Shown: positions 2,681-35,700 of the stretch, piece by piece | Numbering within the stretch: position 1 is the stretch's first letter | How the letters are laid out: each line of letters starts with the position of its first letter | NCBI GenBank assembly: GCA_051294905.1 | Contig: CM119381.1 | Coordinates: forward strand, 11,904,001 to 11,968,000 | DNA: 64,000 nucleotides | Direction: 5' to 3' | DNA from: Botryllus schlosseri | Taxonomy: Eukaryota | The notes under the pieces: generated by a model | Database searches by the model: none | The model's input: only the letters and a program-made list of their open reading frames with translations | What the model was told of the DNA's origin: nothing | Position numbers and translations under genes: made by a program

Positions 2681-2794
2681 CTCCAGTGCAGTAATATCCA
2701 GGCTGACAGGCCGAACTCGAGTAATTAGCGAGACCGGTGTCGTTACACAGATATCCCGACGGACACGAAAAACAATCTGCCTCATTCGAAGCCC
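2681..2794 (-). CDS. Giant Cys-rich gene, exon 94/94
   Basis: AG/GT; phase 1->1, ends at a donor with no stop, so the gene continues leftward; ASNEADCFSCPSGYLCNDTGLANYSSSACQPGYYCTG. Confidence 0.9.
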
Positions 2795-5700
2795 CTATAA
2801 ACAGGATGTCATTGCAGCTATTTTTCATAATCTTGATGATACGATAAAGCACCTTCAATATCCCGATAGGTGTACAATGGGCAGGGCTGTGGTCCAGTTG
2901 GGTCACCGCCAGGGCAAGACCCGTTCATCGCCGAGCAATAATGACCGACCGGGCATAGGTCGGGAATCGGATCGCCTTTGTGACACCAGAATCCAGGAGG
3001 GCATACTGAGCATTCTTCCACTCTGCTTGCACCTGGGCAGTAATTGGGAAAATTTTAAATCAAGGATACTATCATGATGATAATCCGCATTTAGCAAATG
3101 GTAAAAACACAAAATCTTCAGAAATAAGCCGAAAATTTGGGATGAAAGACAGCAATGATATAGACCTGTCAGGCAATTGAATTAAAAATAATATCCCAAT
3201 AATGAAGATTTGCATCCAACGCTTGGTACAAACACCGTATTGGCAGGAATACGTTGCAACCGGAAGCCACACCGATAAAAACATGTAGGGCAAATTAAAT
3301 TGCAAGTAATATGCTGATGATAATCTGCATACAAGGCTTCATAAAGATACAAAAGCCTGCAGAAATATTGAGTAGAAAGTTAATATCAAAAACCTCACTG
3401 ACATTGTAAATAATTGCAATATCCTGGTGATACTCTGCATTCAATGCTTCATAAAAACACAAATATTTGCAGAATACCGACAAAAATTTGCTCAGAAAGC
3501 CAATGTAGATAAAAACCTGTCGTTTCTCTTAAAGTATTCTCCGGACACGGTTCCGGGTCAGTAGTTCCAGTTCCACAGTAGAATCCGGCAGGACACGGAC
3601 CAGCACACGTGGTAAAAGCCGGGCAAGGTTCTTGCGTTGCATTGTAGGTCCACGTGATGTCTCCATCCGCCACGGGAGAAAATGCGCGGGACAAGCAAAA
3701 GTAACCGGGGTCGCAGTCACCCTGGGACAGAAAAGTCACATTTTGATCCGTTTTTCAAATTATGACTGTAAGTTCATATGCATGGTTCACATGTTCATAT
3801 CATAAAAGACTTTGAAAGTAGCGTTCACATCCAATAACAAAAACCTTACCTGTATTTCTCCTCCTGTGCAATATTTCCCAGCATCGCAAGGTGTACACAT
3901 AGTATCGTCTTCCAAGCCTGTTTCGCCAGGCAGAGTGTAAGTGCCGTTTGGACAAAGAGTGGGGGCGGATGAGCCTTAAAAAGAGATTACAGAATTCCGA
4001 TGAAAGAGACGACTACCTCAAAAAGAGCATTGCACTCTAAATATGATGTGGTCTGAAATTTGAGCAGAAAGTGCTAAAAACATTTTGGCTGCAGCTATAA
4101 TTCTCGGTAAGCCACCTTAGTGGAACTGCAGCAGAACGGCAAAAGGATATCCACGAAAAGTACCATTGTAGTATTCGATATCTGTGATATCTAGGGTGAT
4201 GCGGCATCGCTGCTTAATCCGTACCATAGGATTGCCTGACAATTATCTAACATTCATTCTCTGACTCGACCGCCTAAAGAAAGTTATAACGGAAGTTGAT
4301 TCCGGCAATCGTAATTTTCGTTTGAATATAGTGGCATGGCTGATTCCACTTTGTTTTTTACTCACAACGTTAATTCGCGACCACACCATCTTAAGAGCAC
4401 AGTGCCAATTTAAAGAGGTAAAACGTACCAGCTGGACAGAAATGGTATTCCGGACACTCCACTTGATCTCCAGTATCAGATTTCAAACAATAGAAACCGG
4501 CTGGACACAGCACACAGTCTTGCATGCCTAGAGCAGGCTGGTACTGACCTGAATCGCATACTCGAGTTGAAACAAGTGTTGAATTCACAACTGGAATAAA
4601 CATACCCGAAGGGCAAGGTTGCGGCTGGCTTGACCTGCTTGGACAAAAGTGTCCGACAGTGCAACGGAACTGATTGGGATTGGTGTTGGTAGTGTTGCCT
4701 GGGCAGTAATATCCGGGATTACATGGTCCCGATGGAGTCGAGATTCCGGGTACGTTGCAGTAATATCCCTGCGACAAAACAGTTATTTTAGATTATTGCA
4801 TTTTGGATATCATATTTTGAGCACGAGCGATACCAACATCACTGATATAGCACATATTTTACCTATAAACGGACACTATCTTATAACATCATATTGTGAC
4901 ATATTACAATTAGAACTTCTAATTAATGGCGGTAATTTGCAAAAAATATCCCATATCAATTTCACTTATTCACAATAAAACTGCAGATGAGTAAAACACT
5001 AGTATTTCCCTTCAAAAAGGCATGTATTATAGTTGAGGAGGTCAAACTTTTATGCATTTTCACCAAACCTCCTTCATAAATCAGTTTTACCATACTGAAG
5101 ACAGAGAAAACCTACACCTTGTTTTCTGCCAACGTAACCATCATACATGTAAACAGCACGGAAACAAGATGCTAATAGGATAGGAAAGGACGTAGTTTAT
5201 TTTTGTTCTCGATGTTTTTGCGGCAATATGCACCGACTCATGATATGCACAGTTGCACACACACGATTTGTGCATATGCATGCCTTGTACGGCTTTCTAA
5301 GTCTTGCACCACCCCTCCATTCTATCCCAGTAATGCAGGCATGCTTCGGCTTACTGCTATTTCTCCTGTGGCAGTAACCTCTAATAGGAATCTATAGTTA
5401 CTGGGGTGTGTACCGGTCTGAGAGTACCACCTGTTGAATTTGTCTTAGCAATGGAGGAATGGAATTCACATTTCACTGCAGTAACAATTAAAGATACTTA
5501 TCTCAATGAATATAAGATCTCAATAACGATCTCACAAGAGCGCGGCACTTGAAGTGATGACCTGATTGGGACGTTATTTATAAATATAGGTCTGGCTCTA
5601 AACCAAACATTCACAAATTCAAACACTTCATTTCTGCCTGACAAAAATTCACTTTTCCGGTTGAGGTCAACTTCTTCACCGTAGTAACAAAGCAAACAAA

Positions 5701-8700
5701 ATAAAAGGTTAAACTTACAGGATCGCATGGCTGGCAATCCGCCTGCGAAGCTGCCCCAGTCACGTTTCTCATGGTTCCGACATCACAATCCCGGGCGGCA
5801 GTATGGCCTGCTAGACAATAATGCCCGGCTGGGCACTCTCCATTGTATCTTCCGGTGGTTGTATTAAAACCTTCGTTCGGAGTCTTTGTATCGCTTCCAC
5901 CCTCGCATAAATATCCGGCGTCGCATTGAGCTAAAACGTGCGATACATTGAGCGTACAATACATTTTCAGTTGTTCACATATGGTCATTTCTGCACACTT
6001 TGAGATGGAAATCCACTTATATAGCGTTAGACATGGTATGGAAATAAAACCGTGTGTTAAATTCCGAAGATAAAACTACTACTTTTTCGGAGAATCAAAT
6101 TTGACGCTACTAGCACTACTGGAGTAGCTGTATTTTTAGACTAATTCCACTTCTAGAGTTTTTTATGCAAAACATCATACTTTCTAGCTTTAGGAATTTG
6201 CGAAATGGAAAGTGGTTTGAATAGAGCTTTTCTTCAATTATATTAGTAAAATTGTCCCAACAGCCTTGCCGAAACAGCCAATATAACGCAGCAATTGCGT
6301 AAATCTTTGAAAATTGCAGTCATTGGGAGTGTAGTCAGTTCTTTTTGCATTTATCTAGAAGATGCACCGAAAGTAGCCACCCTCAATTAACTGCTAAAAC
6401 ATGCGACCGTTGGACCAAATCTATCTTTTTGAAAGTACTTTAAGTGCTATTCAATCCTTGATCATCTATTTCCACTTAAATTAGCTTTGACCGGTCTTGG
6501 AAATCACTATTTCTAATTGTAATTGAGTAGAAACTTACATGAAAACTGAGTAACTACACTTGCTAATTTGACTACCTCTGTAATTAAATACATAAAAAAA
6601 ATAGTACTTCTCACTAATACTAATAAACAACTCAGATTTAAATCAAATTGCTCACATGGAATTACTATCAATATCAAAAAATATGACGAAAATATGAGGC
6701 AAAAAAACAATACACATGACATGAATTACAGAATCACAACTAAACCCCTTGCAAACGGTAATCAAGACGCCACTAAGTCTCTATGTAACCGCACCTGTCG
6801 GTGATGGATTGCCGACGCCTTCACAATACTGCCCCGGATCACACTCCGTACAATCTCCAATTTTCGTTCCGCCGCTCTGACTTCTGTAAGTCCCGGCAGG
6901 GCAAGGCTGCGCGACGACGACGCCGGCAGGACAGTAAAAACCTAAAAATAACCGTACTCACGATAAATTATTGACCGTTAGTGACTCCAAGACGATTTTT
7001 CCAATATGTCGAAATCAATTGGATGAGAGACATAAGGACTCCAATTACTAGCACCTTTAGAAAAGATTGAACCTTGCACACAATGCACAGTAACATATTC
7101 TATGATGGAATTTATTGGAAATATGCTGCCAATTAACTATAAAATGATGTAAGCATAAAAAATGGTTTGTCATCATCATAAACTATCGAGAAATGAAGGT
7201 ATTCACGGTATAGTATTTCAGACTGAAAATATTGATGCGAAAATTCCACCTACACTGGTCTACAAACATTGGTCAAATTGCCATGCTTTTAATGAATATC
7301 GAGAATTGAGAAATACATTTCGAAAATAACAAGTGGAAAGGCCTCAATACCAGGATCGCAAATGCCAGCCATCGATGTATTTGCCGACGAGCAAATCGTC
7401 CCAGCTTCGCATTCAGCGCAAACGCTAGCCCCAGGATTGGGGCTGTAGTAACCCGGATCACATCCGATCGGATAAGGAGTTCCAGCAGGGCAATAAAATC
7501 CAGCCGGACAGGGTTCACCGGTAACGCCATCGGTTGGTTCTGGAGATACGCTGCCGCCGTAGCATATAAACCTACAAAAAAACGTATTCAAGATTTCAGT
7601 AACGCATGAAAATAATTCAAAGTCTACTTTCTTATCCAAAATAACATGACCATTACAAATCAGGATTCCCATCGAACATGTCAAAGTTCAGGTACTCATC
7701 AACTGTGTCCTCCAAAACACTCAATATATGCAAGTCAGACATCAATTTATTTATACTTGGTTGAGGGTTACGGTCAGGGCATAATGGAAACAATAATTAT
7801 CCTTACCCCAACCTAATCCTAAACCTTAACCCTAATTTTATGATACCGCAACCTAACCTAACCTACAAATCTAACCTTATGACACCCCAACCAACCCTAA
7901 AATATTAAGATACCCTATCCTCAACGCACATAAACGTAAATATATCCAGTAACAAGGTGAATACAGCTGATGATCAGTGATCACGAGAAACACCACAAAT
8001 TTTGAGATGTTCACGAGGAAAACTGATTGGCAATCGTCATGGGGATCACTACTTGATGTGAATAAGGAAGAATGCTGGAAAAATATTCATTTCGAACCCT
8101 GCTGTGCAGTTAGGCGCGTCGCTGTCTGTTTTTCCCGACGAGTCGCAATATTTTCCTGCAGGGCACTGCGTGCAACCGGATTCATTACGTTGCCCAGGAA
8201 TTTGAGAGAAAGTCCCGGCTTTGCATGGTTCAGGTTGACTTGATCCACCAGGGCAAAAATATCCAGTGGGACAAAGACCGTTACCCAGAAATTCTCCTGT
8301 AATGCACATCCCATCATATTAGCAGTCTAGGAAGGCAATTATGTAAACATACGCATTTCTACATTATTACATCTCCAGATGTAGCCAGTGATGACGTACT
8401 TCAACTGTTTCCATGAATTCAAGCACGTTTGGCCACCTCCACTTTTTTAAACTACTTGAATAATTTTTGGATCTATATTTCTACATTTACTTGAAGTTTG
8501 ACATTGCTACTTCTGCTTGTAATTGAGTGTATATGTACTGCATTACTTACACTGCTAAATGAGCAGCAACGCTGACTACTAGACGACTTCTATAGAGTTT
8601 AAATGTACAATAGCAAATACTGACCTGAAATAGTAACAGTAATCGTTTCGTTTAATGGGGCGCTGTCTCCTGCACCGCCGCTGCAAAAGAATCCCGGATC

Positions 8701-11700
8701 ACAAGGCCCGGACGGATCGACAGACGGCGAGTCGCTACAATGCATTCCTTCCAAGATGAATGAGCGATTAGTGAGTATCACAAAATGTGAATGCATCGTA
8801 AATACCTGACGGGCAAGACAGACATTGAGAAGCCAGTTGTGCGCCAGACACGTTATTGTAGGTTCCTGGAGCGCAGGGTATCGGCGATTGTCCGAGCAGA
8901 CAGTAATAGCCTCTCGGACATGGCTCTGGATCTAGGTTACCTGAAAAAAACATTCCAGTTGGCGCACTGTACAGACCAGCAAGCATTTAAAGACGGAGTT
9001 ATTACCCTAAGTTACATGGAAGGCCAATGTTTAAATTGGAACCAAAAGCTATAAAATTAACTCCATAGTCCTTTTCTTATAAGGTATATCCTTGTTATCC
9101 ACTTATGTCCATATATTGTTTTATTTCTAGTGCTTACCTCAGATCATAAAACCACATGGAAAATGATAACACTAATAATTGCGTTCCGACCGGTAATCAA
9201 GCCCCTGGTTGGCCGAAAGTGATGACCTTTTTTAGTTATGAGGTAGCTTTATAGATGAAATGGCAATGAAGTCATGATTAGCCTCTGTTAGGCTATTGAG
9301 AATTTAACCCTGGTTGTGCGGGTTCAAAGGTTAAAAAGTCCTGATTTAAATAGTCTAATTTCAATAGATCTCGGAGGTAGTTTTGGCTGAGGTTGGATTT
9401 TAAATTTTCCCTCTCGCAGATTTTGATTTCATGACAAAACTTGAAATGCTACACTGGACAAGCACTTAGAGAGGGAATGAATAAAATTTCTGGCTTAAAA
9501 TTGAAATTAGAACAAGGATCTCTCGAAAAAGACCGGATAGGTACGCGACGGAATTCAGACTGGAATGTCGTCAATTGACACTTGACTCTAAATTCATGTA
9601 CTCGCATCAGCCCACTGAAAAGGAATGGGCCATAGAGTGAAGCCCTTCAAAACTTACCATCATATGGATCACACTGTTTCCCCGAAGGGCAGTCAAAACA
9701 ACTCGATTTTCCCTGTTCAGGTTGATACGTATTTTCCAAGCATGCAGTTTCGTTAGATGATCCCTCCGGACAGAAATGATTGACCGAGCAGATCAGCGAA
9801 GATGTAGCATCGCCGCCAGGGCAGTAATAGTTGGCTTGGCATTGCGCAGTCTCGTTAGCCCCACCGCCTGTATTTGATAATATTTTCAATTTCAAATGGG
9901 CATTAGGGCTGTCCGTAAATAACTTTTTTTGATAGACGAGATACCAATAATGTGGTGACTATACTGTTCTTTGAAGTTACATTGAAATGTCTGTCTTGGC
10001 CGTCCTAGTCTCGGGTCCTATGACTTGGTCCGAGTCATGCACAAGGACTCGACTACAAGTCAAGTTACACATTTGATAAAATGAGTCGAGTCACCAAAAA
10101 ATCGCGACTTGAGTCATTACAAACCTGAGTGCATGCAAGCATATAGGCAAGTAGACCTACTTGAGTGCCCCAAAACATAGAAGTACATCGTTACTGATCA
10201 ATTTTAAAGAATAAGCTGCTACATATACAATTGTGTATTTAGATCAGATTCACGATTTTGTTGAAGCTGGACATGGAATTTCTGAAATTATCTAATTATT
10301 GTGTGACTTTTCTAATAACTTCACTCATCACTGGACATGGACTCGGACTCGATACAAAATGAACTCCTGATTGTGACTCGGAATTGAATGCCAAATCTGG
10401 AACAGAGTTCTGGAACAGGCTTTGAGAATATCGAAATCCCTCATCTCTACACCGTTGGTTACAGAGACCTCTGAGATAGCACTAATGCTTTTCGATACAG
10501 AATTACTACAAAACCACTGTACAAAATGCCATTCGGGTATCTAGACCAACGGAATTACATGAACGAAAATCACAGATCCCAGTTACCTGTACAATAATAA
10601 CCAGGCGTGCAATCCTGGCAGTAAGTGTCGTTCTCATTTCCATAGGACGGACTGAACGTACCCGGTGGACAGGCCTCTGGAAATGGGCTGCCCTCTTCGC
10701 AGAAGAAACCGGGCGGGCAAATGTTCTGATCAGCCACGGTGCTGAAAGTTTAACGTAGCTTTAACCCTTTGTAACCGGCCGGCCTACTGACCAAAATTTT
10801 ACTGCATCCACATAAAAAACGATAAAATGTCATCCATATGGCTTAAATCGACGCCCAATATATTGCCGTAAACCTGAAGTAGCCGCCTAGCGGTCTGAGA
10901 TACTCTCACAGCTCAGACGCCAGAGGGAATAGTGTTATGCGAGAAAATGTTCTCGATTTCTTGAAAATAAAATACAATTTTGTTCTTCCATATCTCCTGA
11001 CGTCATACCTAGGCTCTCTCTTAGTATATGACCACCTGATTGCATTCCGCATGAATCTCTACGTTTGAACGAGACATTACATGCTACTAGAGCGCTTCAT
11101 AGCCCAGCGCTACGATCTTGGAAAGGTAGAGATGATAAGCACAATCACGCGGCCGCCGCCGATGAGTAATCGATTACGTAATCTCGTATTCTCGCTGAAG
11201 GCAACGCGCGTCCAGTTCTACATAACATAGTAACTGCCTTGGCAATTTTGCCGTTAGTATACATCTCCATGCTATTGAAGTGTTATCAACCCCAGTTACT
11301 TGTTATATGTAACTTGCAACTGCAAGGGATCCGTAAGTATACACAGATGGCCTTATTGGACACTGCCTAGTGCTCATATACGCTCGGGAAGTCATTTCAC
11401 GTGATACATTGCTTTATTTCACATCAATTTGAACTGTATTCTACACGGCTAATGTTCTATGCATGGTCAACAGTAGTCATAGAAGCCAACAGTAACTTCG
11501 TGTGCCATCTAAAACAGATATATAACTGCCTCTATATGATGTTATTATCACAGGCTCGGGTACAAAAATAGCCTAACTCGCACGCTTATTTGTGCCTTGT
11601 TAGGGCTGGTGTCGGCTTTCTTATACAAAACTAAGCTCCATGATAGCGATATTGATGGATATGCCAGGATAATGGCTAACCATATGTATAATTTGCTATT

Positions 11701-14700
11701 GCCTGAAGCAATTGTACATCTGTTTGAAACCGCAACGAGTCAGGTCATCTTACGCAGCCATGATTTTCACGTAATAAGGTATGCTTCTTTCACGTCAATT
11801 TGAAACATCTTCTACGTGCTAATCTTCGATATAAGGACTTTCATAGAATAGTATGACCAACAACAAGTCATAGAAGATAACTGTAATCGGTTATATGACG
11901 TCTAGAACGGAAGATACAATGGTTTATATTTCAGGCGGTCATTCACGCGAACATCATTACAAATTCAATTTTGCGGGAAACATTTTTGCGTGTTCAATCT
12001 GCATTTCAAGCAGGATATACATTGCAACATTAGGTTATACATGGTCTGATGCATTCGTATTTATAAGAGCTATACATACAAACCAATTGCAATCGTTTAT
12101 GACCAGTACAGGTCTAGCTATCTTGGATTAAATGTTGAACTCCTCTGCGTTAAACAGTCGCGGTCTAGTATACTAGACCGCCGGTCGCAAAGGGTTAAAC
12201 CATAAATTTTATGTCAAAGACCAATAAGCAACAAATATGATACATTTGATGAGCTCCTTGGAGGTACGGACCGTAATATACAATTAAAAAGTATATTCAT
12301 ATTGAAATGAAACCGACTATTTTCGGCTGACATTCGCCGAAAATATTCGGGTTCATTTCAATGTGAAGATATCTTTCAAATACCATACAATTAAAAATAT
12401 GATCAAAATATCTAAATTTTTATATTAAAAAATTGTAAGTTGATAAAATTGTGGTCTACCTCCCAGATAAGCAATAATAACCAGCTTTGCATCTTCGATA
12501 TGGCGCGTCGTGTCCGTAAAATGGGCAATACCATCCTGCGTCACAGGCTATCGGTTTTGGGGTGCCAGCCGGACAATAGTAACCTTGAAACAATTTGAAA
12601 TTTCAGTCGTATCGGTGAGTGGTCATCGTCAATTCTGCATACCTGGCTCGCAAATCCCGGCCGTGGATTCCAACAGAGAAGGACAGACGCAATCGTAATA
12701 CCCGCTGCACGAAATGTTACTGGAACGAGTAAATGAATATTTTATTATTACCAATTAACAATCGTTCCTTTACGAGACGCAAGCTTATCACATAAATCAT
12801 CAGCAGCCCGAATGAGAAATTAAACTATTCTGGAATGATATATTCTCTCGAACCACCAGAAATATCACAAAAACCCATGCGTATTTCGATGGTTTCAAGG
12901 CGAAATCGACTTCTGTCTAACAGCTTAGTAATTACTAGTGCTGGGCATAGTGATTAGAGTACTTGAATCTGAGGCAAGTATCGATTTTAATGATTTGAGT
13001 TGGATAGTGAGCATTTATACCCTACATGGAAATAATACCTATTTATTTAAATATAATTACTGTTTCGATGCCGTTTTCACAACTTCCCCAAGTTATTCCA
13101 TTGTATGGTAGAAACATACCAAAATTATTTCTGAACAAGCTGATTTGTAATATTTTATTTGCCTTTTTTATGTAAATTGCAATACTGTACCTGTCAGTAC
13201 TTGGCGTTCCCGGGACAATCGATACGTTGCCGTTGGTGACAGGCTCGGCAGAAGTCGATCCAAGCGTACAGAAATACCCGGCCGTGCAATTACCATCCGG
13301 GATGGTATTAGCTACTCCTTCACAGTACTGGCCCGGTAAACACGGTTCGCAACTTGGGTCCGATTGACCTGGAATTTTGACAGAGAATGAAACCATTCAA
13401 AATTTAACATACAGCTCAAAATTATGATTCCATTACATTGCATTTTTAGCGACAGTAAAGCCAAACCTGTTTTTGAGTTGTAGGAGCCGGCTGGACACGG
13501 ATATTCAAATTCAGATGTTGTCCCAAGCAGGCAGTAGTATCCCGGAGAGCAATCTACTAAATCAACTGTGCCGCCGTCGCAGTACGTACCTTCAATATAT
13601 TCTCATATTGAAAGTTGCAATTGTGATATATCACGAGAAATGCACACCGTAAAAATGCTTCCAGGCGAGTATAATTACAACATCGTACCTCAAATTTGAA
13701 GAAATTTTATAAACAAAGATTACAGACACATAAATATTCAATACACATTCCTCCACTCATAATCAGGTCATTCGAAAGCAAGATCACGAATCCAGATGTA
13801 CCTTGCGGACAAGTCGCGCAGGAAGATTGACCCTCGTTCGCTTGGTGAGTTCCCGGGTCGCAAGGCACAGCCAAACCACCGGGACATTCGCTGCCACGTG
13901 GACACGGACCTCCCGAGCCCTGTCAAAATACATTTAAGAATAAAGAGCTTCTTGGAGGGACAGAATTTCAATATACAATTGAATAGTCTATATAGAATAT
14001 AGAATATATATATATATTGAAATGAATTTACTATTCAATTTACGAATAAATTTTCATGAAACAGGCAATGACGTTGCTATATACACCTTGCTGATTGAAT
14101 CTCCATACATTTACGAATAAATGAAGATAAATGTTAAACAAACCTTGTTGGTGGAATTATCCGGATTACTAACATCAACGCCAATGATACAGTTGAAACC
14201 GGGGTCACATCTGTCAGTCTCATTACTGCTCCCGATTAAACAATAATACCCGGCTGTGCACTGAGTACAGTCAGACTCTTGGGACAGTCCCAGTCTTGGA
14301 TTGAAAGTACCTAAACGTGGAAATTGTAATGAAAAATGCACCTAAATAAATTAACGAATCATTGTTTTCACCAGAAGGACATTTTTGCAGGTTTGAACCA
14401 GTTTGTTCCGGACAGTAGTGACCTGTTGGGCACGGCACTGCCTCGTCACGAGAGTCACACGAATAGCCAGCAGGACAAACATCGCATATTTCGGCCCCAG
14501 TATAGTTGGAGTAATATCCGTCTTCGCATGGAGTAGGCGCTGAAGAATCTTCAGGGCAGTAGTATCCAGGCTGGCAGATGTTTTGCTCGGGATTGTCTGC
14601 CCCGCCGTTGCAATAATACCCAGCAGCACATGGGCCTGAATATGTGAAGTTTCAAAGTTACTAGTGAAAAATAATAAAAATTTAGAGTTCACATACCTGT

Positions 14701-26700: not shown

Positions 26701-29700
26701 TTCCTATGTAGTCACAATCGAGAAACTCAATCTGAGGCAGACGTGTAACGTTTTATTTTCAGAATAAAAAATTTGATGTTTAATGATAAAATGTGTAGAC
26801 CAACATATTTTAAAGCAAACAATATTGCTAATAAATGGGGCGATTTTTTTGACATGTCAAAAATAGTCAAAATTTTGTCAAAATTGTAGCGCTAGGTGAA
26901 AAAATGTCAAAATTGTTTACAAAGTCAAAATTTTTTTACAACCTGCATTTCGTTTGTCACTGTCGGTGAACTTATCATTTGATATTTTACAGCATGTAGC
27001 CTTCTTCATAGGCCTATACCGCTGTAGACGGCCCATGTCTGCTCATTGTGAATCATAAACATTCAAATGAAACAAATAGGTTGACGTGCGGTGTTATGCT
27101 CAACGTACCGCAATATCCTAACTGAAGAAAGACTGCGTGGGCATTGCATGGTTCTTATATCAAGAAGCGCTTGATGAAAAAATGTGATGTAGACACCATT
27201 CTCAGAATGAAGCAACACGGTTTGTCAGCAGCAGTGTACGCACAGTCGCACAACTTCCGTGTTTTCAGCCAACAACTGCTGCTGTTGAACGTTCTTTCTC
27301 CATTCTTGGCAAGTTTCTTACTGCGGACAGACACTTTCTACCGGGAATGTAGGAAACTATCTTTCGTTGTACTACAACAACTTTTAATTATTTCTACTAT
27401 GATACGTGATGTAACTACTGAAATTCTTCATAGGGCCAGATTTCGTTAAAATCAAGTTTATTCATGTAAAAATTTGTCAGTTTTTGAGTCAAACAAGATT
27501 TTTTAGGCAAACTACTTCGTAAGGACAGACAGTTCCAACCAGAAATGAAGATAAGTAGTACAATTCCAACATTATATGGGGAAACACCTAATTTGCATAA
27601 GCTAGGTCAAAATAAGTCCAAAAATGTCAGAATTCTGATTTTTCAGGTCAAAATGTTCCGTTTTTTAGGTAAAAAAAAACGCCCTACTAATAAAGGATCC
27701 CACGACAATGCACCAAAACAATAGTTCTGACCTGGATCGCATGGTTTACAATCTCTCAACGATTGTTGCATGGTGAACGGATTGTAAGTACCCGGCGGGC
27801 ATGGAAATTCGAATTGGTCGGTGGTTCCGTTGGGACAATAGTGTCCGACTGGACACTCCTTGCCCTCGTATGTGCTGGAATTTTGCGGACAGTAATACCT
27901 AAAAGAGACATATCAATGATGTTAAGGTACCATCGCATAAATCTCCCAGGATATTCTTCAATTCTCGAATTGAAATCTCGAATTGATTGGTCATATTTCA
28001 AAGTTAACAAACCAACGTCACTTACCCCGCAATACAAGTAAAGCAATATTCTAGTCCTTCCAAATCATTGTACGTCCCGCCAGGGCAAGGTTGCGGTGTG
28101 GCTGTACCAGGTGGGCACTGCTGACCTCTCGGGCAAGGCCCTCCCGTTTCATCCGCGACAGGAATCTACCGTCATAGGAAAGTTCAGAGTTGGATCTTAT
28201 ATGTTGATTTTCAATACAAACCTTGTCGGTTTTGGCTCCAAGAACGCAGTAGTAACCGCCGGAGCAATTCCCAGTTGGCTCGGAAGATCCTTCCAGGCAA
28301 TACATGCCAGGATCGCAAAGTGTGCAGTTTTCCTAGTAATGAAAGAAAATATAGCTTCACATTTGATCATATCAGGTCATCTGATCACCCAAGTATAACC
28401 ACGCAGTTAGATATCGACTTATCTGGAAGGAACGTCTAATACAGTTAATTTCAATAGACTTTGTGGTCAATTAAGCAAATATTAGGACTTTGAAACAAAA
28501 TCAATTTCTTGAATGACAGCTGACAAAAAATTCTCAGCCATTCATGCCAGTAAAGTGGAAAGGAAAGGAAGGATGGAAGGAAAGGACGTAGTTTATTTTT
28601 GTCCTTGATGTTTTTGCGGCATATACACCGACTCATGATACACATACACACGATCTGTGCATATTCATACCATGAGTGCATGATGTGCATATGCCGCTGG
28701 ATAAGGAAGTGCAGATATAGCCTTTACGGCTTTCTAAGTCATGCACCACCCTCAATGCTATCCCAGTAATGCATGATCGCCAAGCAGGGAAGTCATGGAT
28801 AGCAGTGTTACTAATCAGGTCTTCGGTATGACCCGGCCGGGGATCGAACCCACGACCGACCGATCAAGAAGCCGGACGCTTCACCATTACGCTATCTTGT
28901 CGGCAACATGCTTTTTGTAAATAGTGCCAGAGGTCCAATGACCTTGTTATCCCCTTTTCCGACCAAAACTCTAAAACAATCTCACTCGGCACGTCGCGAA
29001 TTCCATGCATACCGAAATAGTCGTGTAATTATGGTAACTTGCCAAATGGAGTTGTTAAGAAAAGGCAGCGTCTCAAAGACATACCTGCGCCACAAGTCCT
29101 TCTTCCCGAGAATAAGTGCCTGCTTCACACGGCACTTCTATAGTTGCGCCTTCAGGACAATAATATCCGGGAGAACATTTTCCGTTTGGAGCTGAAGATG
29201 ACAGAACAGTATAGTTACTGGTGGCAAAAGGTGTTTGAATATTCAAGAGTTGACTAAAATCGGGCACGATAAGAGGATATACATATGCAATACAATTTTC
29301 ATTCCAGTATGCAGGAACATGTGACAACACTGACAATCAGAAATCTAACCACCAAGATCAATGAGATACAATACACAAGGTGAAAGTGTTGTTCAGGTGA
29401 CGAAAATTGTACTAATGCGTGACTACAATTCTAATGATGTTGCTATATGATTCCAAGAAACACCAGGTATACTTTCAAGAATTGCGACTCTAGCGCAGAA
29501 AACTTTGCTCTTGAACATACCAATCGTTTGTGAACGATGTTGCGGCTGATACAGTGGAGTTTAAATAGATCATGCACTCCACATGCTTATTGTTCCAAAA
29601 TACCTCTCAAGGCTACAATGGGGGGTAGAAAGTTGAGGAATGTTTGGAGTGCATTTCATGGAGCTACAGGCCAACTTTGCCAGTTATCTTGAAGTGACAA

Positions 29701-32700
29701 GAAATCTTTTACTGCAGCACAGAGCTCAAAGGTTCAGGCATCGTTCAAAGCTATATAATTTCTTCTGTTAACACAGAAATGAACTCACGGTCAGATCCGT
29801 CCGGCGTAGGTGTGCTGCTGCTGCCGGCGCAATAAAAGCCAGCGTGGCAATCGCCGGATACATCTGTAGCATTTGCATCATTGCAGTATTTCCCAGCTTC
29901 ACAAGCCGCACAGTCGGTACTGTTAGCGAGCATATTGCTTTGTCCATACCGCCCAGGAGGACAAGATTTCCAGTCATAACCGGTACCTTCTTCGCAATAA
30001 AACCCTGAAAACAGCATCTGTGATGTTTACCATTTTCCAACATCATGGACGATTTTGAGAAACAAGAGGGCAAAAATACCAAAAGGGCGACTATGGGGCG
30101 AAAATTTTTGAACATCCGGGTAGATATATTTAATTAACATGACCAAAAAATGCACGTGAAGACGGTTTATTCTGCATATGACGTGAAAGTTGACTGAAAA
30201 AGGTCAACTCAATGGAAAGTAGACGCGTAAACCGTTGTTTTAAGCACCTACTCGGAAAAATGTCCTTATTTTAGTTAACTCAGCAACGGTCAGAGTTTGG
30301 CTAATATATTTGATGTTTGTACGGCTTCTTTTTCGTATCCACAATTATGACGGCGAAAATTTGTGTCGAGCTTAATAAAGGGGCGATGAGTCGAAAAAGG
30401 TTGGTAACACTGCTCTAGTACTTTTTGAACCTTTCATTTTCTACTTCTACCTGAAGTAGTCTTGGCCTGTGTTGGAACTCGTTGTAAATGCACTAAAACT
30501 TGCGAAAGATGCCCAAAAGCCCACGTCTGACTTAATGCTACAAGTTTGCAGCATCTCGACTAAATCTACTTTTTCAAAACTATATACTCGGGTACTTTTC
30601 AGATATTTGATTTTCAACTTCTACATGAAGTAGTTTTGGCATGACTCGTATGTTGTAACTTCCACTCGCAATTACAAAAATAGAAATTCACAGCATAAAT
30701 TTGACCGCCTCTGATTGTACCTTGAGGGCATGGCAATAAATCGATCCCATTGATGCAGTATGTTCCAGCGGGGCAAGGCATGCATGTTTCGGCTTGCACC
30801 GTTGGACTGAACGTGCCCGGATCACACGTGAACGGGGTGCCAGTGCCTGTGTGTAAATGTGATTTAGGGAAATTGACATAATAATTATCAAAAGCCATTA
30901 CCTTCAGGACAGTAGTGGCCGATAGTGCAGTTGTTACTTTCAGGCGATTCGTCACGGCCTGGGCAGTAAAATCTAGAAAGGGATGATAATATATTGAACA
31001 TATCCAAGCACAGTACGAATTGTTGAAATTGTGTTACAATAGTGAAGCAAAATTCATATGAGCAATGAGATTACATCGTTTTGCGGAATTGCACGCTACA
31101 AACGTAATGAGAAAATCGGTGTGGCAATTGGACAAATGCGATTTGCCCGAGTAAATCCCAGTGGAAATCCGGAAGAGATGCTGCAAATTACAATTGGCCA
31201 CTTCCGTGTCACAGGAAATAAGGATTAGGGACTATATGAATCACAAGTTAAGAATCAGTTGCAATGCAGTGGATTCTGGATAAGTCTCAACTTGGATTTA
31301 TCCAATCCAACGCGGAGCAAAGTTGTAGACTGCAGTAATCATTCTTGAAGAGTTGGCACAACTAGTTGCACTATTGGAAGATATCGGCAGAAAGATTGAT
31401 TTTACCTAGCATAGCATTGCCCTTTGGGCTCTTCGAGACCAGTCTCGTCACAATAATATCCAGGAGTGCAATCTTCACACTGGCCTGAGTACTCCTTCCC
31501 AGTTTGATTATTAAATGTACCTCTTTGACACGGAACCGGATTCGCCACACCTGAAATGAACGAAAAAAGAATCAGAAACTGCCGAACTGCAGAGGCATCT
31601 TGAGGGATGATATAGGCTACATCGGTATATGTGAGTAAATCGGAAAATAGGATCACCTGCATTGCAGTATTTTCCTTTTGGACACGGTTCGCCTGTGACG
31701 CCATCTTCAGGGTTGGGAACCACCGCCCCCCCGATACACCAGTAACCGCCCTCGCAGTTAATTTGCGTGCCTGTAAAACAATGTGCAGCACTCACAAAAG
31801 ACTATTCAAAGTACTTTGCAAGCTTTAATTTCATGATAGCATCAAAGCATCATCCATCGTCAAAAGCTCGGAAATGCTAATCAATGAAAAATACGGGCAC
31901 CTGCTTACATACAGGAAATATATTATGTATTTAAAAAAATTGATATTAAAATTTTTTTACTGGTATGAAAATAATAAACAGCAATCCACACTGCATAAGG
32001 TATGTCCTAACCTGACGAAAATGGAACCAAATGTACCGAGTCGCAATTGGATAAAATATAGTAGTTAAAGAAATAACACATGCATTATCATCAATCTTTA
32101 ATAAATTTTCGATATATCCAGAAACTAGACCATTGATTTGTATCAAAAAGTATATTAAACTAATGCAAGTTGATTACACAATGCAATTCAATTCACCGAT
32201 AATAAAATGTGACAATGACAGAGTCTATTGGTTTCCGCCATAGGTGGGGTTGTAAAACGTATTAGTGTTCAGTCAACTGCATCATGATTTTCATGATGTA
32301 ACCGTGCATTCTAACCCATACTCGATACCATCACTGGTCTTACGGGTAGTGGAAAAATTCCGAGTGACCCCCAGAATCAATCGAACTAGCAGTTTAACCG
32401 CTACACTGCAGACTTTTGTTTTGGTTCAGATGCTGCAAAAATATCAGCTATGTGTACTCAGGTCGAATAGTTATTGTCTACCGCATAAGGGCATTGAACA
32501 TCCTCTAATTTCATGACTTGCATGATTATGGACATTGGCATTATGGACATTATGGTTGATGAATTCAAAAACTTCCGCTCTCCCTGTAACGTCAAAACAT
32601 TCAGTCATCTCACTTCTCGTCCTTCCTTCGGGACTGCAATATTTTCCGGGATCGCACAGGCTGCAGGACGTGGCATTTTGAAAGTTGAGTCCTTCTCCGT

Positions 32701-35700
32701 AAGTGCCGTTGGGACAGCCAAATTCGTTCATCATCCTGGTACCTTCCGGGCAGTAGTAGCCGAGTGGACAGTCGTACAACGTATAATCCGATATGGGTCC
32801 GTCAGACCGATCGCAATAATAGCCTGAACGGAACGAATATGCGACTGTTGATCTACACAAACTGGTCGACAAATTTCGAGAAAACATGTATTTTCGTATC
32901 ATTTCAAACGCGAAAAAAGTCTTATCAGACAGGTTTTCGTAAAGCAATCCCAAGTTTTACAGGCGAGCAAAATGACGCCATTTGCCAAAATAAAAGGGTT
33001 ACCATATTTTGAGATCCGAAATATAGGACACTCTTTACAAATCACAATAGATGAAGTAGCATTCATTGATACGAGGAATTAGGAAATTTTACTCCCACTA
33101 TTGCTGTGCTGACTAAAAAGAGTTCAATTTTTTCGAATCTACTCCCGAATCCTATTATGGGTTGATGTTGACCTTTCTTTTTTTAGTCAACCAGGCAATC
33201 CGAATCGAGATTTCACGTATATTATGCCATTTTTTAGTTGCCTCCGTACGATCTCCTGGCCCTCAAAGCTATAGAGGTCAAGTTGTGTCAAACGATAACA
33301 TTTCTTGAAAAAAGAGGACATATGGTGATCCTACACAATAATGAAGGCTGCGTGGCAGTAAGGTTTCCCGTGCCTTTCAGTTTTCAACTGATCTCTGAAG
33401 ACTTCTAGCTAATTACATTGCGAGACATATAGTTGTTACCTTGGGTAGATTTAAAAAGTGTTCGAGGGGTCACACAAACAGCCGTGCTGCATTTACACTC
33501 AGGAGAAGGATATATCCTACGACATGTATTTTTAGACTTACAAGTTAATTAACAGTGTAAGCGCACTAAACACCGCACATCTCTACCGTAGCTTACCTGC
33601 GGGGCATATTTTACAATCAGATTTCTGACTTTCGTCCTGATAGAAGCCGGAGTCGCAAAGGACCTGATCGGGGGATTTGGTCGGACAGAAGTATCCCGGT
33701 TGGCAAGCCTGTTCCTGCGGAGAGGACGACCCGCTCATACAGTAGAAACCTGACAACACACCATACCGATGAGATTCGTATCAAACAATTCTACTGAGCC
33801 TAATTTCATATCAGATACTCTATTTTCACCCAACTGAAATACATCAAACCGCAATATTGATATAGCAAAAAATAAAGCAAACACGGCATTTGGACATGAT
33901 TTGAATATGTGAGATTTGAAAATCCCATTTACCTTCGTCGCATACTCCGGTAGGTTCCGTGGCGGGCAACTCATTGCAATAATACCCTGCGGTACAATCG
34001 TGGCAGTCTGTCCTCGCACCTAGTCCTGTTTCATTTCCGAACGTGCGCACCGGGCATGGCTCTGGGTTTTGCGTGCCGGCCTCTGAAGACAAAATTATAA
34101 TCGCACCTATTAGAATTCCATTCCAATTTTGCGCAAAAACAAAGTTTTACAACTTTGTTGCTCATCTGACAGCCAAACCATGTGCACAGCGAATATTCTT
34201 ACCAAAACAAGATCAAGACTTCGTTTTTTTCTATTCCAAATACTTTTTAGTTACATCTCCTGTTTAGGTATGACGCCGAATTCTGAAAGTTTATAAAATA
34301 TGTTGCAGAGGGCAATACTAGATGGATCATGTTCGGAACAGCAAATATTGAATAGAGAGACATCTTAAGTAGTGATTGTCACGTTCGCAAGCCATTCAAA
34401 ATAGTGAATGGCAAAACAGCGAGAGTCGATGCCATGCAGAATACACAAACGAATGGCATAATAATTATAAGCAATATCTTGCGCCTCACCGCAGAAATAT
34501 CCCTCGGGGCAGAAATTTCCACTGACGCCATCTTCTGGATCTGGACGGGTCGCGGACCCGTTGCAATAGTAACCCGCCTCGCAAAGCGGTCCCACTGCGG
34601 TCATACCTGAAATGGAAGTAAATTCACCATAATATTTGAGCGAAGGTGTTCAAAACAGTCATCTTTGGTACAGATATAGAAGCAGCTTCGAACATTCCTA
34701 TCCTAGAATAAGAATAAGTAGCGATTTTAAAGAACTGCAGGACCAGTTTCTCTAAAAACTTAGACTTGTGAATTAGAAATGGAATGTTGCTCAAATCATA
34801 GCCAGTCTAGCACGAAGTGCAAGTCGGTAAAACCAACTTCATTACTTCGATAAAGTAGAATTACTTCATTACAGACCACCTCTGGTTATCGGATAACAAT
34901 ATGTTGGGCTTAAACAACTTAGGAAACTTACTGGAATTGGGACAGTAATGGCCTCCGTCACACGGTTTCGGCTCACCAGTCCCACCAGGACAGTAAAAGC
35001 CAACAGGACATTCTCCCCCGTTAGCGGTAGGGCATATTTCCGACCCATCCGTGAAATTGCCATATCCGCTCGGAGTAGGCGTGCTCACGTTAACAAGGCA
35101 ATAAAATCCTGTGGAAAAATATAAATTTTCAATCGGAAATATTTTAGAATCACATTCATTTTACCAGGATCGCAATCTCCGGACACAGTCGTGCTGCCCG
35201 AGCCGTCACAAAATTTGCCTGGATCGCACGGTCTGCATTGATCCGCAGAGCCAAGCATTGGCTCAGTTCCGTAAGTGCCAGGCAGGCAAGGAAATTCAGT
35301 GGAAGACCGAGTACCTGGGAGCGATTGATATTTGAATTAATTGGTGCGAAATATTAATAATAATAATTATGATATCACAATAATTTATAAAGCCGTGAAT
35401 ATAGCATTATATATGATATCTACACTATGGTGCTATACACAAAAGGCTACTAAAAAAGTATAACGATATGCATAGTTGTAAGGAAAGAATGAATACCATG
35501 TAGAGATGTACATGTAAATAAAATGCTTTTGATTTTACGCTTGAAAACATCTTCCGAGACAGATATTTTAATTCTATTCAATTTATTATGAACAATTTCC
35601 CATTTCAAAACACCACAGGACTGAGATTCAATGAAAAGATTGGAAGGTGTCGAAACGACTTGGAGTAGTCTTTGAAATCAGACATCCCGTGTCCTAGGAT

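What the first reader, a model, noticed from the sequence alone, without database searches (positions are those of the whole stretch)
3623..35034. Hidden ~692-aa super-repeat (molecular-ruler-like periodicity) in the giant Cys-rich protein
Seen: among roughly 70-aa CxxGxYC units, five carry an extended linker with extra Cys. These are EICPTANGGEC (exon 37, Cys codon 35032-34), SCLCPVNDSLTSTGGRC (exon 52, 26224), NCVCPVEDGIGGRC (exon 65, 18842), DCVCPSLLESTAGIC (exon 79, 12683) and EPCPAFTTCAGPC (exon 92, 3623). In spliced coordinates the Cys-Pro anchors are 2079, 2073, 2079 and 2073 nt apart, i.e. 693, 691, 693 and 691 aa, despite very different genomic spacing. A second marker, the xYQ....Q.xC-type unit in exons 82, 68, 55, 40 and 26, recurs at ~2,060-2,100 nt. 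Intron positions are not repeated between blocks, so this is not a recent exon-block duplication. One unit is displaced by ~70 aa in the exon 65-79 block, yet block length is kept. Inference: ancient tandem amplification of a ~10-unit block whose length has been conserved, as in titin and nebulin super-repeats. The protein could be an elongated extracellular or ciliary filament with regularly spaced hinge, cross-link or binding sites.
Basis: partly seen in the sequence, partly recalled or inferred. Interest (0 to 1): 0.82.

Follow-up and report, generated by a model that had tools for sequence, protein, structure and literature searches.

The report
Ancient 700-residue super-repeat, giant protein
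A giant sea-squirt cell-surface protein made of small cysteine-rich modules really does hide a block of about 700 amino acids repeated four to five times; the same blocks occur in the same order in animals as distant as Trichoplax, so the pattern is very old, but nothing yet shows that it measures anything.

Summary
Confirmed. All 13 junctions of exons 66-79 are confirmed by spliced transcript contigs.

Block-length alignments peak only at offsets of about 700 and 1,400 aa. Five collinear blocks of 691-698 aa are 35-41% identical.

The period is not special to this genome. It occurs in Clavelina, Trichoplax, Hydra, amphioxus, a stingray, two unnamed invertebrates and a paralogue on another contig. 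Thirty blocks from five species average 703 ± 12 aa.

A maximum-likelihood tree groups the tunicate blocks 1-4 with Trichoplax blocks 1-4 by position, so the amplification predates the placozoan-bilaterian split. The "displaced unit" is the ancestral unit order of block type 3.

The gene spans about 105 kb and encodes an uncharacterised single-pass membrane protein. Homologues are mislabelled zonadhesin or SCO-spondin; a Peromyscus homologue carries the mouse name Gm9195. One block folds as a rod like the 26-nm cysteine-rich domain of the Chlamydomonas mastigoneme protein MST1. The linker is a low-confidence loop with a CxC motif and a glycosylation site.

A ruler role is untested. I found no significant length compensation, and block number varies between species (4 to 9). 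The scan had noted the paralogue before, on other DNA.

The parts
2681..63951 (-). Window part of the gene: 94 exons, 4,712 aa of uninterrupted Cys-rich modules (10.9% Cys, 97 N-glycosylation sequons). The gene continues beyond both ends of the window.
   Evidence: DP gene model. 13 junctions confirmed by spliced contigs. Collinear at 42-61% identity (mostly about 50-60%) with Clavelina protein P0238. Cys content and sequon count.
55663..63949 (-). Region I (aa 0-483, exons 1-10): simple 32-33-aa units.
   Evidence: Unit lengths. Best self-offsets are multiples of about 32.5 aa.
46349..55660 (-). Region II (aa 483-1112, exons 10-23): sub-period of about 203 aa (units of 55, 58, 53 and 36 aa).
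35043..46346 (-). Block B0 (aa 1112-1803, 691 aa): a degenerate block with no CxC linker at its start.
   Evidence: Aligns collinearly with B1-B4 at 35-38% identity.
26238..35040 (-). Block B1 (aa 1803-2495, 692 aa). It starts at the exon 37 linker, which has lost the first Cys of CxC.
   Evidence: Groups with Trichoplax b1 and P0001/P0152 b1.
18856..26235 (-). Block B2 (aa 2495-3186, 691 aa). It starts at the exon 52 CxC linker, which has an NET sequon just upstream.
12697..18853 (-). Block B3 (aa 3186-3884, 698 aa). It starts at the exon 65 CxC linker and has the type-3 unit order.
   Evidence: (junctions).
3634..12694 (-). Block B4 (aa 3884-4576, 692 aa). It starts at the exon 79 CxC linker and is the last block, orthologous to the last block of other animals.
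   Evidence: clade support 100/100.
2687..3631 (-).
   Evidence: Collinear with P0001 6787-6950. Only a background-level linker-HMM hit (26 bits).
34932..35108 (-). Exon 37, linker 1.
26130..26249 (-). Exon 52, linker 2.
   Evidence: Linker HMM 94 bits.
18757..18917 (-). Exon 65, linker 3.
   Evidence: Linker HMM 122 bits.
12643..12719 (-). Exon 79, linker 4.
   Evidence: Linker HMM 100 bits.
3517..3721 (-). Exon 92, terminal pseudo-linker.

Best explanation
The window holds the middle of a gene of about 105 kb for a giant type-I membrane protein. The protein has more than 6,300 aa of Cys-rich ectodomain, then a compact membrane-proximal domain, one transmembrane helix and a long conserved cytoplasmic tail. 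The ectodomain is a stack of small disulfide-knotted modules of the growth-factor-receptor / TNFR / ephrin-receptor-like kind, which form a rod.

The repeats are nested. There are 33-aa modules, a sub-block of about 205 aa, and a block of about 700 aa with about nine unit types in fixed order and 72 conserved Cys positions. Each block begins with one special loop: GWYC, then KP, then an N-glycosylation sequon, then CxC, then GG-x-C.

The block was amplified in tandem before placozoans and bilaterians split. Four blocks have since been kept as distinct, positionally orthologous segments. Some lineages later added copies of the third type (nine blocks in total), and bony vertebrates have fewer CxC linkers (one or two).

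Shown: the period, its orthology across phyla, the rod-like fold, the membrane anchoring and transcription. Inferred: the constant period comes from purifying selection on every module, because partial indels would break disulfide pairs, not from selection on length as such. Calibrated on MST1 (678 aa = 26 nm), each block would be a rod segment of about 27 nm, so the CxC/glycan loops would mark a stalk of roughly 0.25 micrometre at intervals of about 27 nm. The loops probably act as flexible or cross-linking points.
For: The gene model and anchors are. The period is tested against other offsets, and the blocks are aligned. The same period is seen in P0001, P0152, Trichoplax, amphioxus and Chromosphaera. 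Linker-HMM spacing is 691-722 aa in those proteins, and about 685-698 aa in Clavelina, Hydra and a stingray. Thirty blocks average 702.8 aa with SD 12.3. Nearest-neighbour identities and the ML tree show positional orthology: the clades for the first, third and last blocks have support of 99/96, 98/98 and 100/100. The type-3 unit order is shared across phyla. The C-terminal exons lie downstream of the window and include the transmembrane helix, the DKLEDQ motif and the C-terminal domain. The AF2 model of a block has pLDDT 89, with the only segment below pLDDT 50 lying over the sequon and CxC loop. The only PDB relatives by profile and by fold are MST1 mastigoneme chains (E 7e-18 and 1e-20). 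MST1 residues 1176-1853 form one 26-nm rod (PMC11015965). A sequon just before CxC is present in 21 of 30 blocks.
Against: The function is not known for any member of the family. No Pfam family covers the non-repeat parts, and the literature holds only gene-list mentions. The 27-nm figure is an extrapolation from a distant relative, and the AF2 pTM of 0.44 says nothing about long-range shape. The tunicate blocks have long branches (about 1.57), and two of the positional groupings have only moderate support (82/60 and 86/61). Junctions outside exons 66-79 rest on my model and on collinearity with Clavelina, not on RNA. The test for length compensation has low power and uses related blocks.
Confidence: 0.8

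Rival explanations
1. True molecular ruler or periodic scaffold. Block length itself is under selection because the CxC/glycan loops must match a periodic partner, or a staggered self-assembly as in titin, nebulin or the collagen D-period.
For: Block length is very uniform across about nine species (SD 12 aa on 703). Unit order inside the block has been conserved since before the Placozoa-Bilateria split. The related MST1 rod dimerises antiparallel and polymerises (PMC11015965). Var(total)/sum var(segments) is 0.72, which leans towards compensation.
Against: That ratio is not significant (P = 0.12). The apparent compensation in block 3 is an ancestral arrangement. The number of blocks varies (4, 9, and only 1-2 CxC linkers in bony vertebrates), so total length is not fixed. 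No partner and no assembly is known.
Confidence: 0.15
2. Recent segmental duplication, concerted evolution or an assembly artefact produced the repeated blocks.
For: Tandem repeats are prone to mis-assembly. In P0001 the middle blocks b4-b6 are more alike (51-54%).
Against: The window's blocks are only 35-41% identical and have different intron positions. Each is closer to the same-position block of Trichoplax (44-45%) than to its neighbours. Transcript contigs span block 3. The Clavelina orthologue is collinear over 4,700 aa with only about 13 aa of net indel.
Confidence: 0.02
3. The 692-aa spacing is a chance pattern among many multiples of the base unit, read into five hand-picked motifs.
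For: Other offsets (about 205, 900, 980 and 1600 aa) also give good local hits. Ungapped autocorrelation shows no peak near 692.
Against: Block-length global alignments peak sharply only at about 700 and 1400 aa. The other offsets are explained by the 205-aa sub-block (700 ± 205, 1400 + 205). A linker HMM finds the same spacing in independent species.
Confidence: 0.01

Closest known systems
Unnamed family of giant ephrin-receptor-like-repeat membrane proteins. Members: Trichoplax TRIADDRAFT_55968, Hydra LOC100202447, Podarcis LOC114585457, a Peromyscus homologue named 'Predicted gene 9195' (the mouse name Gm9195), and fish entries labelled 'zonadhesin' or 'SCO-spondin'.
   Same: Same overall architecture, with collinear similarity through the repeats, the membrane-proximal domain, the transmembrane helix, the DKLEDQ motif and the C-terminal domain. 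The invertebrate members and a stingray have the same super-repeat of about 700 aa.
   Different: Nothing is published on its function or repeat architecture in the library searched. Bony vertebrates have only one or two CxC linkers. The database names zonadhesin and SCO-spondin are automatic, and no zonadhesin or SCO-spondin domain was found in the parts scanned with Pfam.
Chlamydomonas mastigoneme protein MST1 (PDB 8tx1, 8wa2, 9b4h)
   Same: It is the only solved structure found by profile (E 7e-18) and by fold (E 1e-20, alignment spanning the whole 703-aa block). Its Cys-rich domain of 678 aa is a single 26-nm rod of the growth-factor-receptor type (PMC11015965).
   Different: MST1 has one such rod, with 26 disulfides against about 36 conserved Cys pairs per block here. 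It also has nine Ig-like domains and a glycosylated polyproline helix, has no transmembrane helix and is secreted and polymerised. The sequence match is at module level, not collinear over the whole block.
Super-repeats of titin and nebulin, and the collagen D-period
   Same: A hidden higher-order period made of heterogeneous small units in a fixed order, conserved over long evolutionary time.
   Different: In those proteins the period matches a known periodic partner or a stagger, and copy number tracks filament length. Here no partner is known, copy number varies, and length compensation is not significant. The modules are disulfide-rich and extracellular, not Ig/Fn3 domains, actin-binding repeats or triple helix. 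The comparison rests on general knowledge and was not tested.
ELAPOR1, TNF receptors and the Eph-receptor Cys-rich region
   Same: Weak fold matches to the same module type and weak Pfam hits to PF07699, PF00020 and PF23091.
   Different: Those proteins have a handful of modules, not hundreds, and no super-repeat. The matches are weak (E of 5e-3 to 1).

Membership tests
Giant ephrin-receptor-like-repeat membrane protein family (TRIADDRAFT_55968 / Gm9195-like, unnamed) | Thousands of residues of CxxGxYC / CxxGTY modules, collinear with family members | tested here: met
   phmmer finds 2,968 relatives, the best with 84 matched stretches. The window protein is collinear with Clavelina P0238 at 42-61% identity and with P0001 in its first blocks and last block.
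Giant ephrin-receptor-like-repeat membrane protein family (TRIADDRAFT_55968 / Gm9195-like, unnamed) | Conserved non-repeat membrane-proximal ectodomain followed by a single transmembrane helix | tested here: met
   tblastn finds collinear exons at window coordinates -395 to -7278. The exon at about -7156 to -7269 encodes a hydrophobic helix followed by WRPR...KPKYR.
Giant ephrin-receptor-like-repeat membrane protein family (TRIADDRAFT_55968 / Gm9195-like, unnamed) | Cytoplasmic FNV(K/R)TL(Y/F)DKLEDQ motif and a C-terminal domain with NAFR...H-x-x-A-H | tested here: met
   Exons at about -8075 to -8230 (62% identical to P0001) and about -22000 to -23000.
Pfam PF07699 Ephrin_rec_like (formerly GCC2_GCC3) | Score above the gathering threshold of 23.1 bits | tested here: inconclusive
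   The best single-ORF score is 21.2 bits, because exons are too short. Full-length homologues carry PF07699 in the precomputed tables.
Titin/nebulin-type ruler super-repeat | Heterogeneous modules in a fixed order that recurs with a constant period | tested here: met
Titin/nebulin-type ruler super-repeat | Period selected as a length (compensating indels), with copy number tied to a structure | tested here: not met
   Variance ratio 0.72, P = 0.12. Copy number is 4 in the tunicates and Trichoplax and 9 in P0001/P0152.
Titin/nebulin-type ruler super-repeat | A periodic binding partner or a staggered assembly | not testable with these tools
   No partner is known. No complex prediction was run.
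MST1-type mastigoneme protein | Growth-factor-receptor-type Cys-rich rod | tested here: met
   Profile and fold matches.
MST1-type mastigoneme protein | N-terminal Ig-like domains, a C-terminal hydroxyproline-rich PPII helix, and a secreted protein without a membrane anchor | tested here: not met
   This protein has a transmembrane helix and a long cytoplasmic tail. No Ig or polyproline region was seen in the model or in homologues. It is not a member.

The most novel reading that the evidence does not exclude
The 700-aa blocks are rigid rod segments of about 27 nm. Their glycosylated CxC loops mediate staggered or antiparallel lateral association, or inter-chain disulfides. Many copies would then build a periodic extracellular lattice or filament, anchored through the conserved coiled-coil tail. 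This would be a cell-surface spacing device shared from protists to vertebrates, related in principle to mastigoneme assembly.
Probability: 0.12. Interest if true: 0.85.

Novelty: new member of a known kind. Interest (0 to 1): 0.55.

Why it matters
Super-repeats are known from a few giant proteins such as titin and nebulin, where they encode spatial information. Here the same kind of nested architecture appears in an uncharacterised family of very large membrane proteins found across eukaryotes, including vertebrates.

The individual blocks have stayed recognisable and in the same order since before placozoans and bilaterians split. This gives a concrete map for studying the family: block boundaries, CxC/glycan loops, and an expected spacing of about 27 nm. 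It also flags database names such as zonadhesin and SCO-spondin as probably wrong.

It offers a natural experiment as well, since lineages have 4 or 9 blocks. That can help tell a true ruler from a pattern that is only inherited.

Tried and rejected
- Ungapped autocorrelation of the spliced protein shows no clear peak at about 692 aa. Gapped, block-length alignment was needed.
- Pfam on single exons gives only sub-threshold hits.
- phmmer of one P0001 block against the PDB finds nothing. Only the 26-block profile finds MST1.
- MST1 is not collinear with a whole block, so I dropped the idea that one block equals the MST1 domain.
- The length-compensation test is not significant.
- The two bulk RNA-seq runs X18 and X20 gave almost no reads on the 6-kb stretch, so depth and strand could not be read. 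Junctions come from Logan contigs of runs X1 and X2, whose RNA nature is inferred from splicing.
- My gene finder was trained on Cys-rich exons and loses the non-repeat C-terminal exons. Those rest on tblastn hits.
- Pfam finds nothing in the C-terminal parts of four homologues.
- Fold search of the membrane-proximal domain gives only weak cupredoxin-like matches.
- Literature searches for the family, Gm9195, TRIADDRAFT_55968 and LOC100202447 found no functional study. One preprint lists zebrafish si:ch211-286b4.4 among testis-biased genes. I did not verify that this zebrafish gene belongs to the family.
- No complex prediction was run, because self-association is only a speculative reading.
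Full report
**1. Gene model and the observation**

The window is eukaryotic, about 40% G+C. All 116 matches to C-x2-G-x-[YFHW]-C lie on the minus strand. I wrote a splice-aware dynamic-programming gene finder, using codon log-odds plus donor and acceptor matrices retrained on its own output. It returns 94 exons from 63951 down to 2681, giving 4,712 aa with no stop.

The Cys codons of the Cys-Pro anchors are at exactly the coordinates reported. The spliced distances are 2079, 2073, 2094 and 2073 nt, that is 693, 691, 698 and 691 aa.

I laid contigs of two runs on 12640-18639. All 13 introns between exons 66 and 79 appear as joints with CT..AC ends, which is GT..AG on the minus strand, at my predicted boundaries. 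So this part of the model is transcribed and spliced as predicted, and 698 aa is the correct third spacing. The second marker (TYQ unit) recurs at 695, 700, 688 and 689 aa.

**2. Is the period more than the base repeat?**

Ungapped autocorrelation is uninformative. Gapped tests are clear:

- With 140-aa windows, the best self-hits between aa 1600 and 4300 fall again and again at about ±690-702, 1380-1390, 2066-2082 and 2772-2779 aa.
- With 70-aa windows, 98 of 359 best hits lie within 20 aa of a multiple of 693.5.
- A 695-aa reference aligned globally to segments starting at every unit anchor scores 1387 and 1422 at -701 and +702, and 1146-1220 at ±1400. Elsewhere it scores about 900-1100.

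Units anchored on CxxGTY have a recurring order of lengths: about 79, 72, 49, 79, 78, 53, 150-160 (with the linker), 73 and 58 aa. Five blocks (B0-B4, 691-698 aa) align collinearly at 35-41% identity.

The protein is hierarchically repeated. There are 32-33-aa units at aa 0-483, a period of about 203 aa at aa 483-1112, and then the 700-aa blocks. The blocks themselves contain a sub-period of about 205 aa, which explains the secondary offsets near 205, 900 and 1600 aa.

**3. What the gene is**

The window is G000:C11:11904001-11968000. I fetched 40 kb downstream and 20 kb upstream.

Downstream, tblastn with the C-terminal parts of homologues finds collinear exons from window coordinate -395 to about -23000. 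These include:

- a membrane-proximal non-repeat domain;
- an exon encoding a hydrophobic helix followed by WRPR...KPKYR;
- an exon with the motif FNVKTLYDKLEDQNLH, 62% identical to P0001;
- a C-terminal domain.

Upstream, Cys-rich exons continue to about +83.5 kb, including one exon of 1.9 kb. The Cys-rich part totals about 6,300 aa. The gene therefore spans roughly 105 kb.

**4. Relatives**

An exhaustive phmmer search with exon 56 finds 2,968 proteins, many of 4,000-7,800 aa. Searches with the non-repeat region give named members:

- Trichoplax TRIADDRAFT_55968, Branchiostoma belcheri, Hydra LOC100202447, Clavelina lepadiformis and Oikopleura;
- many fishes, frogs, reptiles and birds, and some mammals, labelled 'uncharacterized', 'zonadhesin(-like)' or 'SCO-spondin(-like)'. 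A Peromyscus homologue is named 'Predicted gene 9195', the mouse name Gm9195;
- protists: Salpingoeca, Chromosphaera, Fabomonas, Kipferlia, oomycetes and Blepharisma.

Pfam recognises only PF07699 in the repeats and nothing in the C-terminal parts. The paper library holds only gene-list mentions. The family is uncharacterised as far as I could see.

**5. Do orthologues keep the period?**

Yes. Best-self-hit offsets peak at 680-700 and 1400 aa in P0001, P0152, Trichoplax and amphioxus. They peak at 640-680 and 1320-1360 aa in the two Chromosphaera proteins. They do not peak there in Salpingoeca, Fabomonas, Kipferlia, Oikopleura or bony vertebrates.

An HMM of the linker region gives strong hits at these spacings:

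| Protein | Spacing of strong linker hits (aa) |
|---|---|
| P0001 | 691-718 (nine linkers) |
| P0152 | 692-721 |
| Trichoplax | 695, 697, 703 |
| Amphioxus | 700, 717, 700 |
| Clavelina | 698, 693, 685 |
| Hydra | 695, 694, 437, 691 |
| Stingray | 689, 694 |

The window protein is collinear with the Clavelina protein over all 4,700 aa, at 42-61% identity and with a net indel of about 13 aa. A paralogue on contig C6 (about 9.667-9.742 Mb; 5,363 aa modelled) also peaks at 680 and 1360 aa.

**6. Age of the amplification**

Thirty blocks from the tunicate, P0001, P0152, Trichoplax and amphioxus average 702.8 aa (SD 12.3) and share 72 conserved Cys columns. Each tunicate block is most similar to the block at the same position in Trichoplax (43.8-45.3%) or in P0152 for block 2, and not to its own neighbours.

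The IQ-TREE tree gives the following clades:

- last block: Tri_b4, Tun_b4, Amp_b4, X1_b9, X2_b9 (support 100/100);
- first block (99/96);
- second block (82/60);
- third block: Tun_b3, Tri_b3, X1_b3, X2_b3 (98/98).

The third-block clade lies inside a larger group (100/99) that also holds the extra middle blocks of P0001, P0152 and amphioxus. So four differentiated blocks existed before placozoans and bilaterians diverged, and the third type expanded later in some lineages. The tunicate branches are long (about 1.57), so the moderately supported nodes should be read with care.

In block type 3 the 49-aa unit is sixth and not fifth. Trichoplax b3, amphioxus b3 and P0001 b3 and b5 share this order.

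**7. Introns**

Of 93 introns, 58 are phase 1, and 50 of those split a Gly codon. Twenty-eight lie at the Gly of CxxG^xYC or CxxG^TY. In the five-block alignment, 69 introns occupy 60 positions. Nine positions are shared by two blocks and none by three. This agrees with an old duplication followed by extensive intron turnover.

**8. Structure**

An AlphaFold2 model of Trichoplax block 3, built with the 26-block alignment, has mean pLDDT 89 and pTM 0.44, and consists of short beta-hairpins throughout. The only stretch with pLDDT below 50 is residues 41-54, which is the N-glycosylation sequon plus CxC plus Pro of the linker. A second dip lies at about residues 241-250.

The block profile hits a single PDB sequence, Chlamydomonas MST1 (E 6.9e-18). 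Foldseek ranks MST1 chains first (E about 1e-20, with alignments of about 800 columns), followed weakly by ELAPOR1, TNF receptors and Eph receptors.

According to PMC11015965, MST1 residues 1176-1853 form one 26-nm rod with 26 disulfides, which dimerises antiparallel and polymerises. Scaling by that figure, one block would be about 27 nm and the whole Cys-rich ectodomain roughly 0.25 micrometre. This is an inference, not a measurement.

The linker consensus is GWYC...KP...N-x-[ST]...C-x-C...GG-x-C. The sequon before CxC is present in 21 of 30 blocks, including tunicate blocks 1, 2 and 4.

The membrane-proximal domain folds compactly (pLDDT 82, pTM 0.80). Its last beta-sandwich resembles cupredoxins only weakly.

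**9. Ruler or relic?**

I split the 30 blocks at the conserved Cys columns. The variance of total length is 0.72 of the sum of segment variances, and 12% of column-wise permutations do as well. So there is no significant sign that indels compensate each other.

Block number varies between lineages. The constancy of the period is therefore sufficiently explained by selection on each module and on the differentiated block as a whole. A ruler or periodic-assembly role remains possible but untested.

**10. Verdict**

This is a new example of a known kind of architecture, in an uncharacterised but widespread protein family.

Noticed in passing
window 13943-13974 (intron between exons 75 and 76): A stretch of about 32 nt collects enormous depth (word depth about 8,000 in X1 and 4,000 in X2; about 180 partly fitting reads in X18), with unrelated loose ends on both sides and two fixed differences (G13959T, T13966C). 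It looks like a chance near-match to a very abundant transcript or a short dispersed repeat, not part of this gene.
   Followed up: no
G000:C6:9667602-9741904 (loci L008-L016), minus strand: A paralogous giant Cys-rich gene: 75 modelled exons, 5,363 aa, exons up to 1,125 nt. It matches the block profile more strongly than the window gene and is about 36-37% identical and collinear with Clavelina P0238 and Chromosphaera P0006. It also has self-offsets at 680 and 1360 aa, but few strong CxC linkers.
   Followed up: partly
window coordinates +78801 to +80679 (loci L006/L007): One uninterrupted exon of 1,879 nt encodes about 626 aa of 33-aa units. This is in sharp contrast with the exons of about 150 nt elsewhere in the same gene.
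   Followed up: no
all 93 introns of the window gene: There is a strong phase-1 bias (58 of 93). Fifty introns split a Gly codon, often the Gly of CxxG^xYC, where the mRNA reads like a proto-splice site (AG|GT). Positions are rarely shared between blocks, which suggests parallel intron gain or sliding at a recurrent motif.
   Followed up: partly
window coordinates about -2700 to -7300 (locus L002); modelled on Clavelina P0238:5118-5533: The membrane-proximal non-repeat ectodomain folds confidently (pTM 0.80). Its last beta-sandwich gives weak cupredoxin-like matches (plastocyanin, early-nodulin-like proteins; E 1e-3 to 1e-1). Invariant Cys and His residues are present, but no copper site was tested.
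   Followed up: partly
homologues P0164, P0169, P0188, P0191 and others: Vertebrate members of this family are named 'zonadhesin', 'zonadhesin-like', 'SCO-spondin' or 'SCUBE3' by automatic annotation. In the parts scanned with Pfam (and the precomputed lists), only PF07699 was found, so these names look wrong.
   Followed up: partly
window 42641-46185: The intron between exons 23 and 24 is unusually long (3.5 kb), at the start of block B0. I did not examine its content for a transposon or a missed exon.
   Followed up: no
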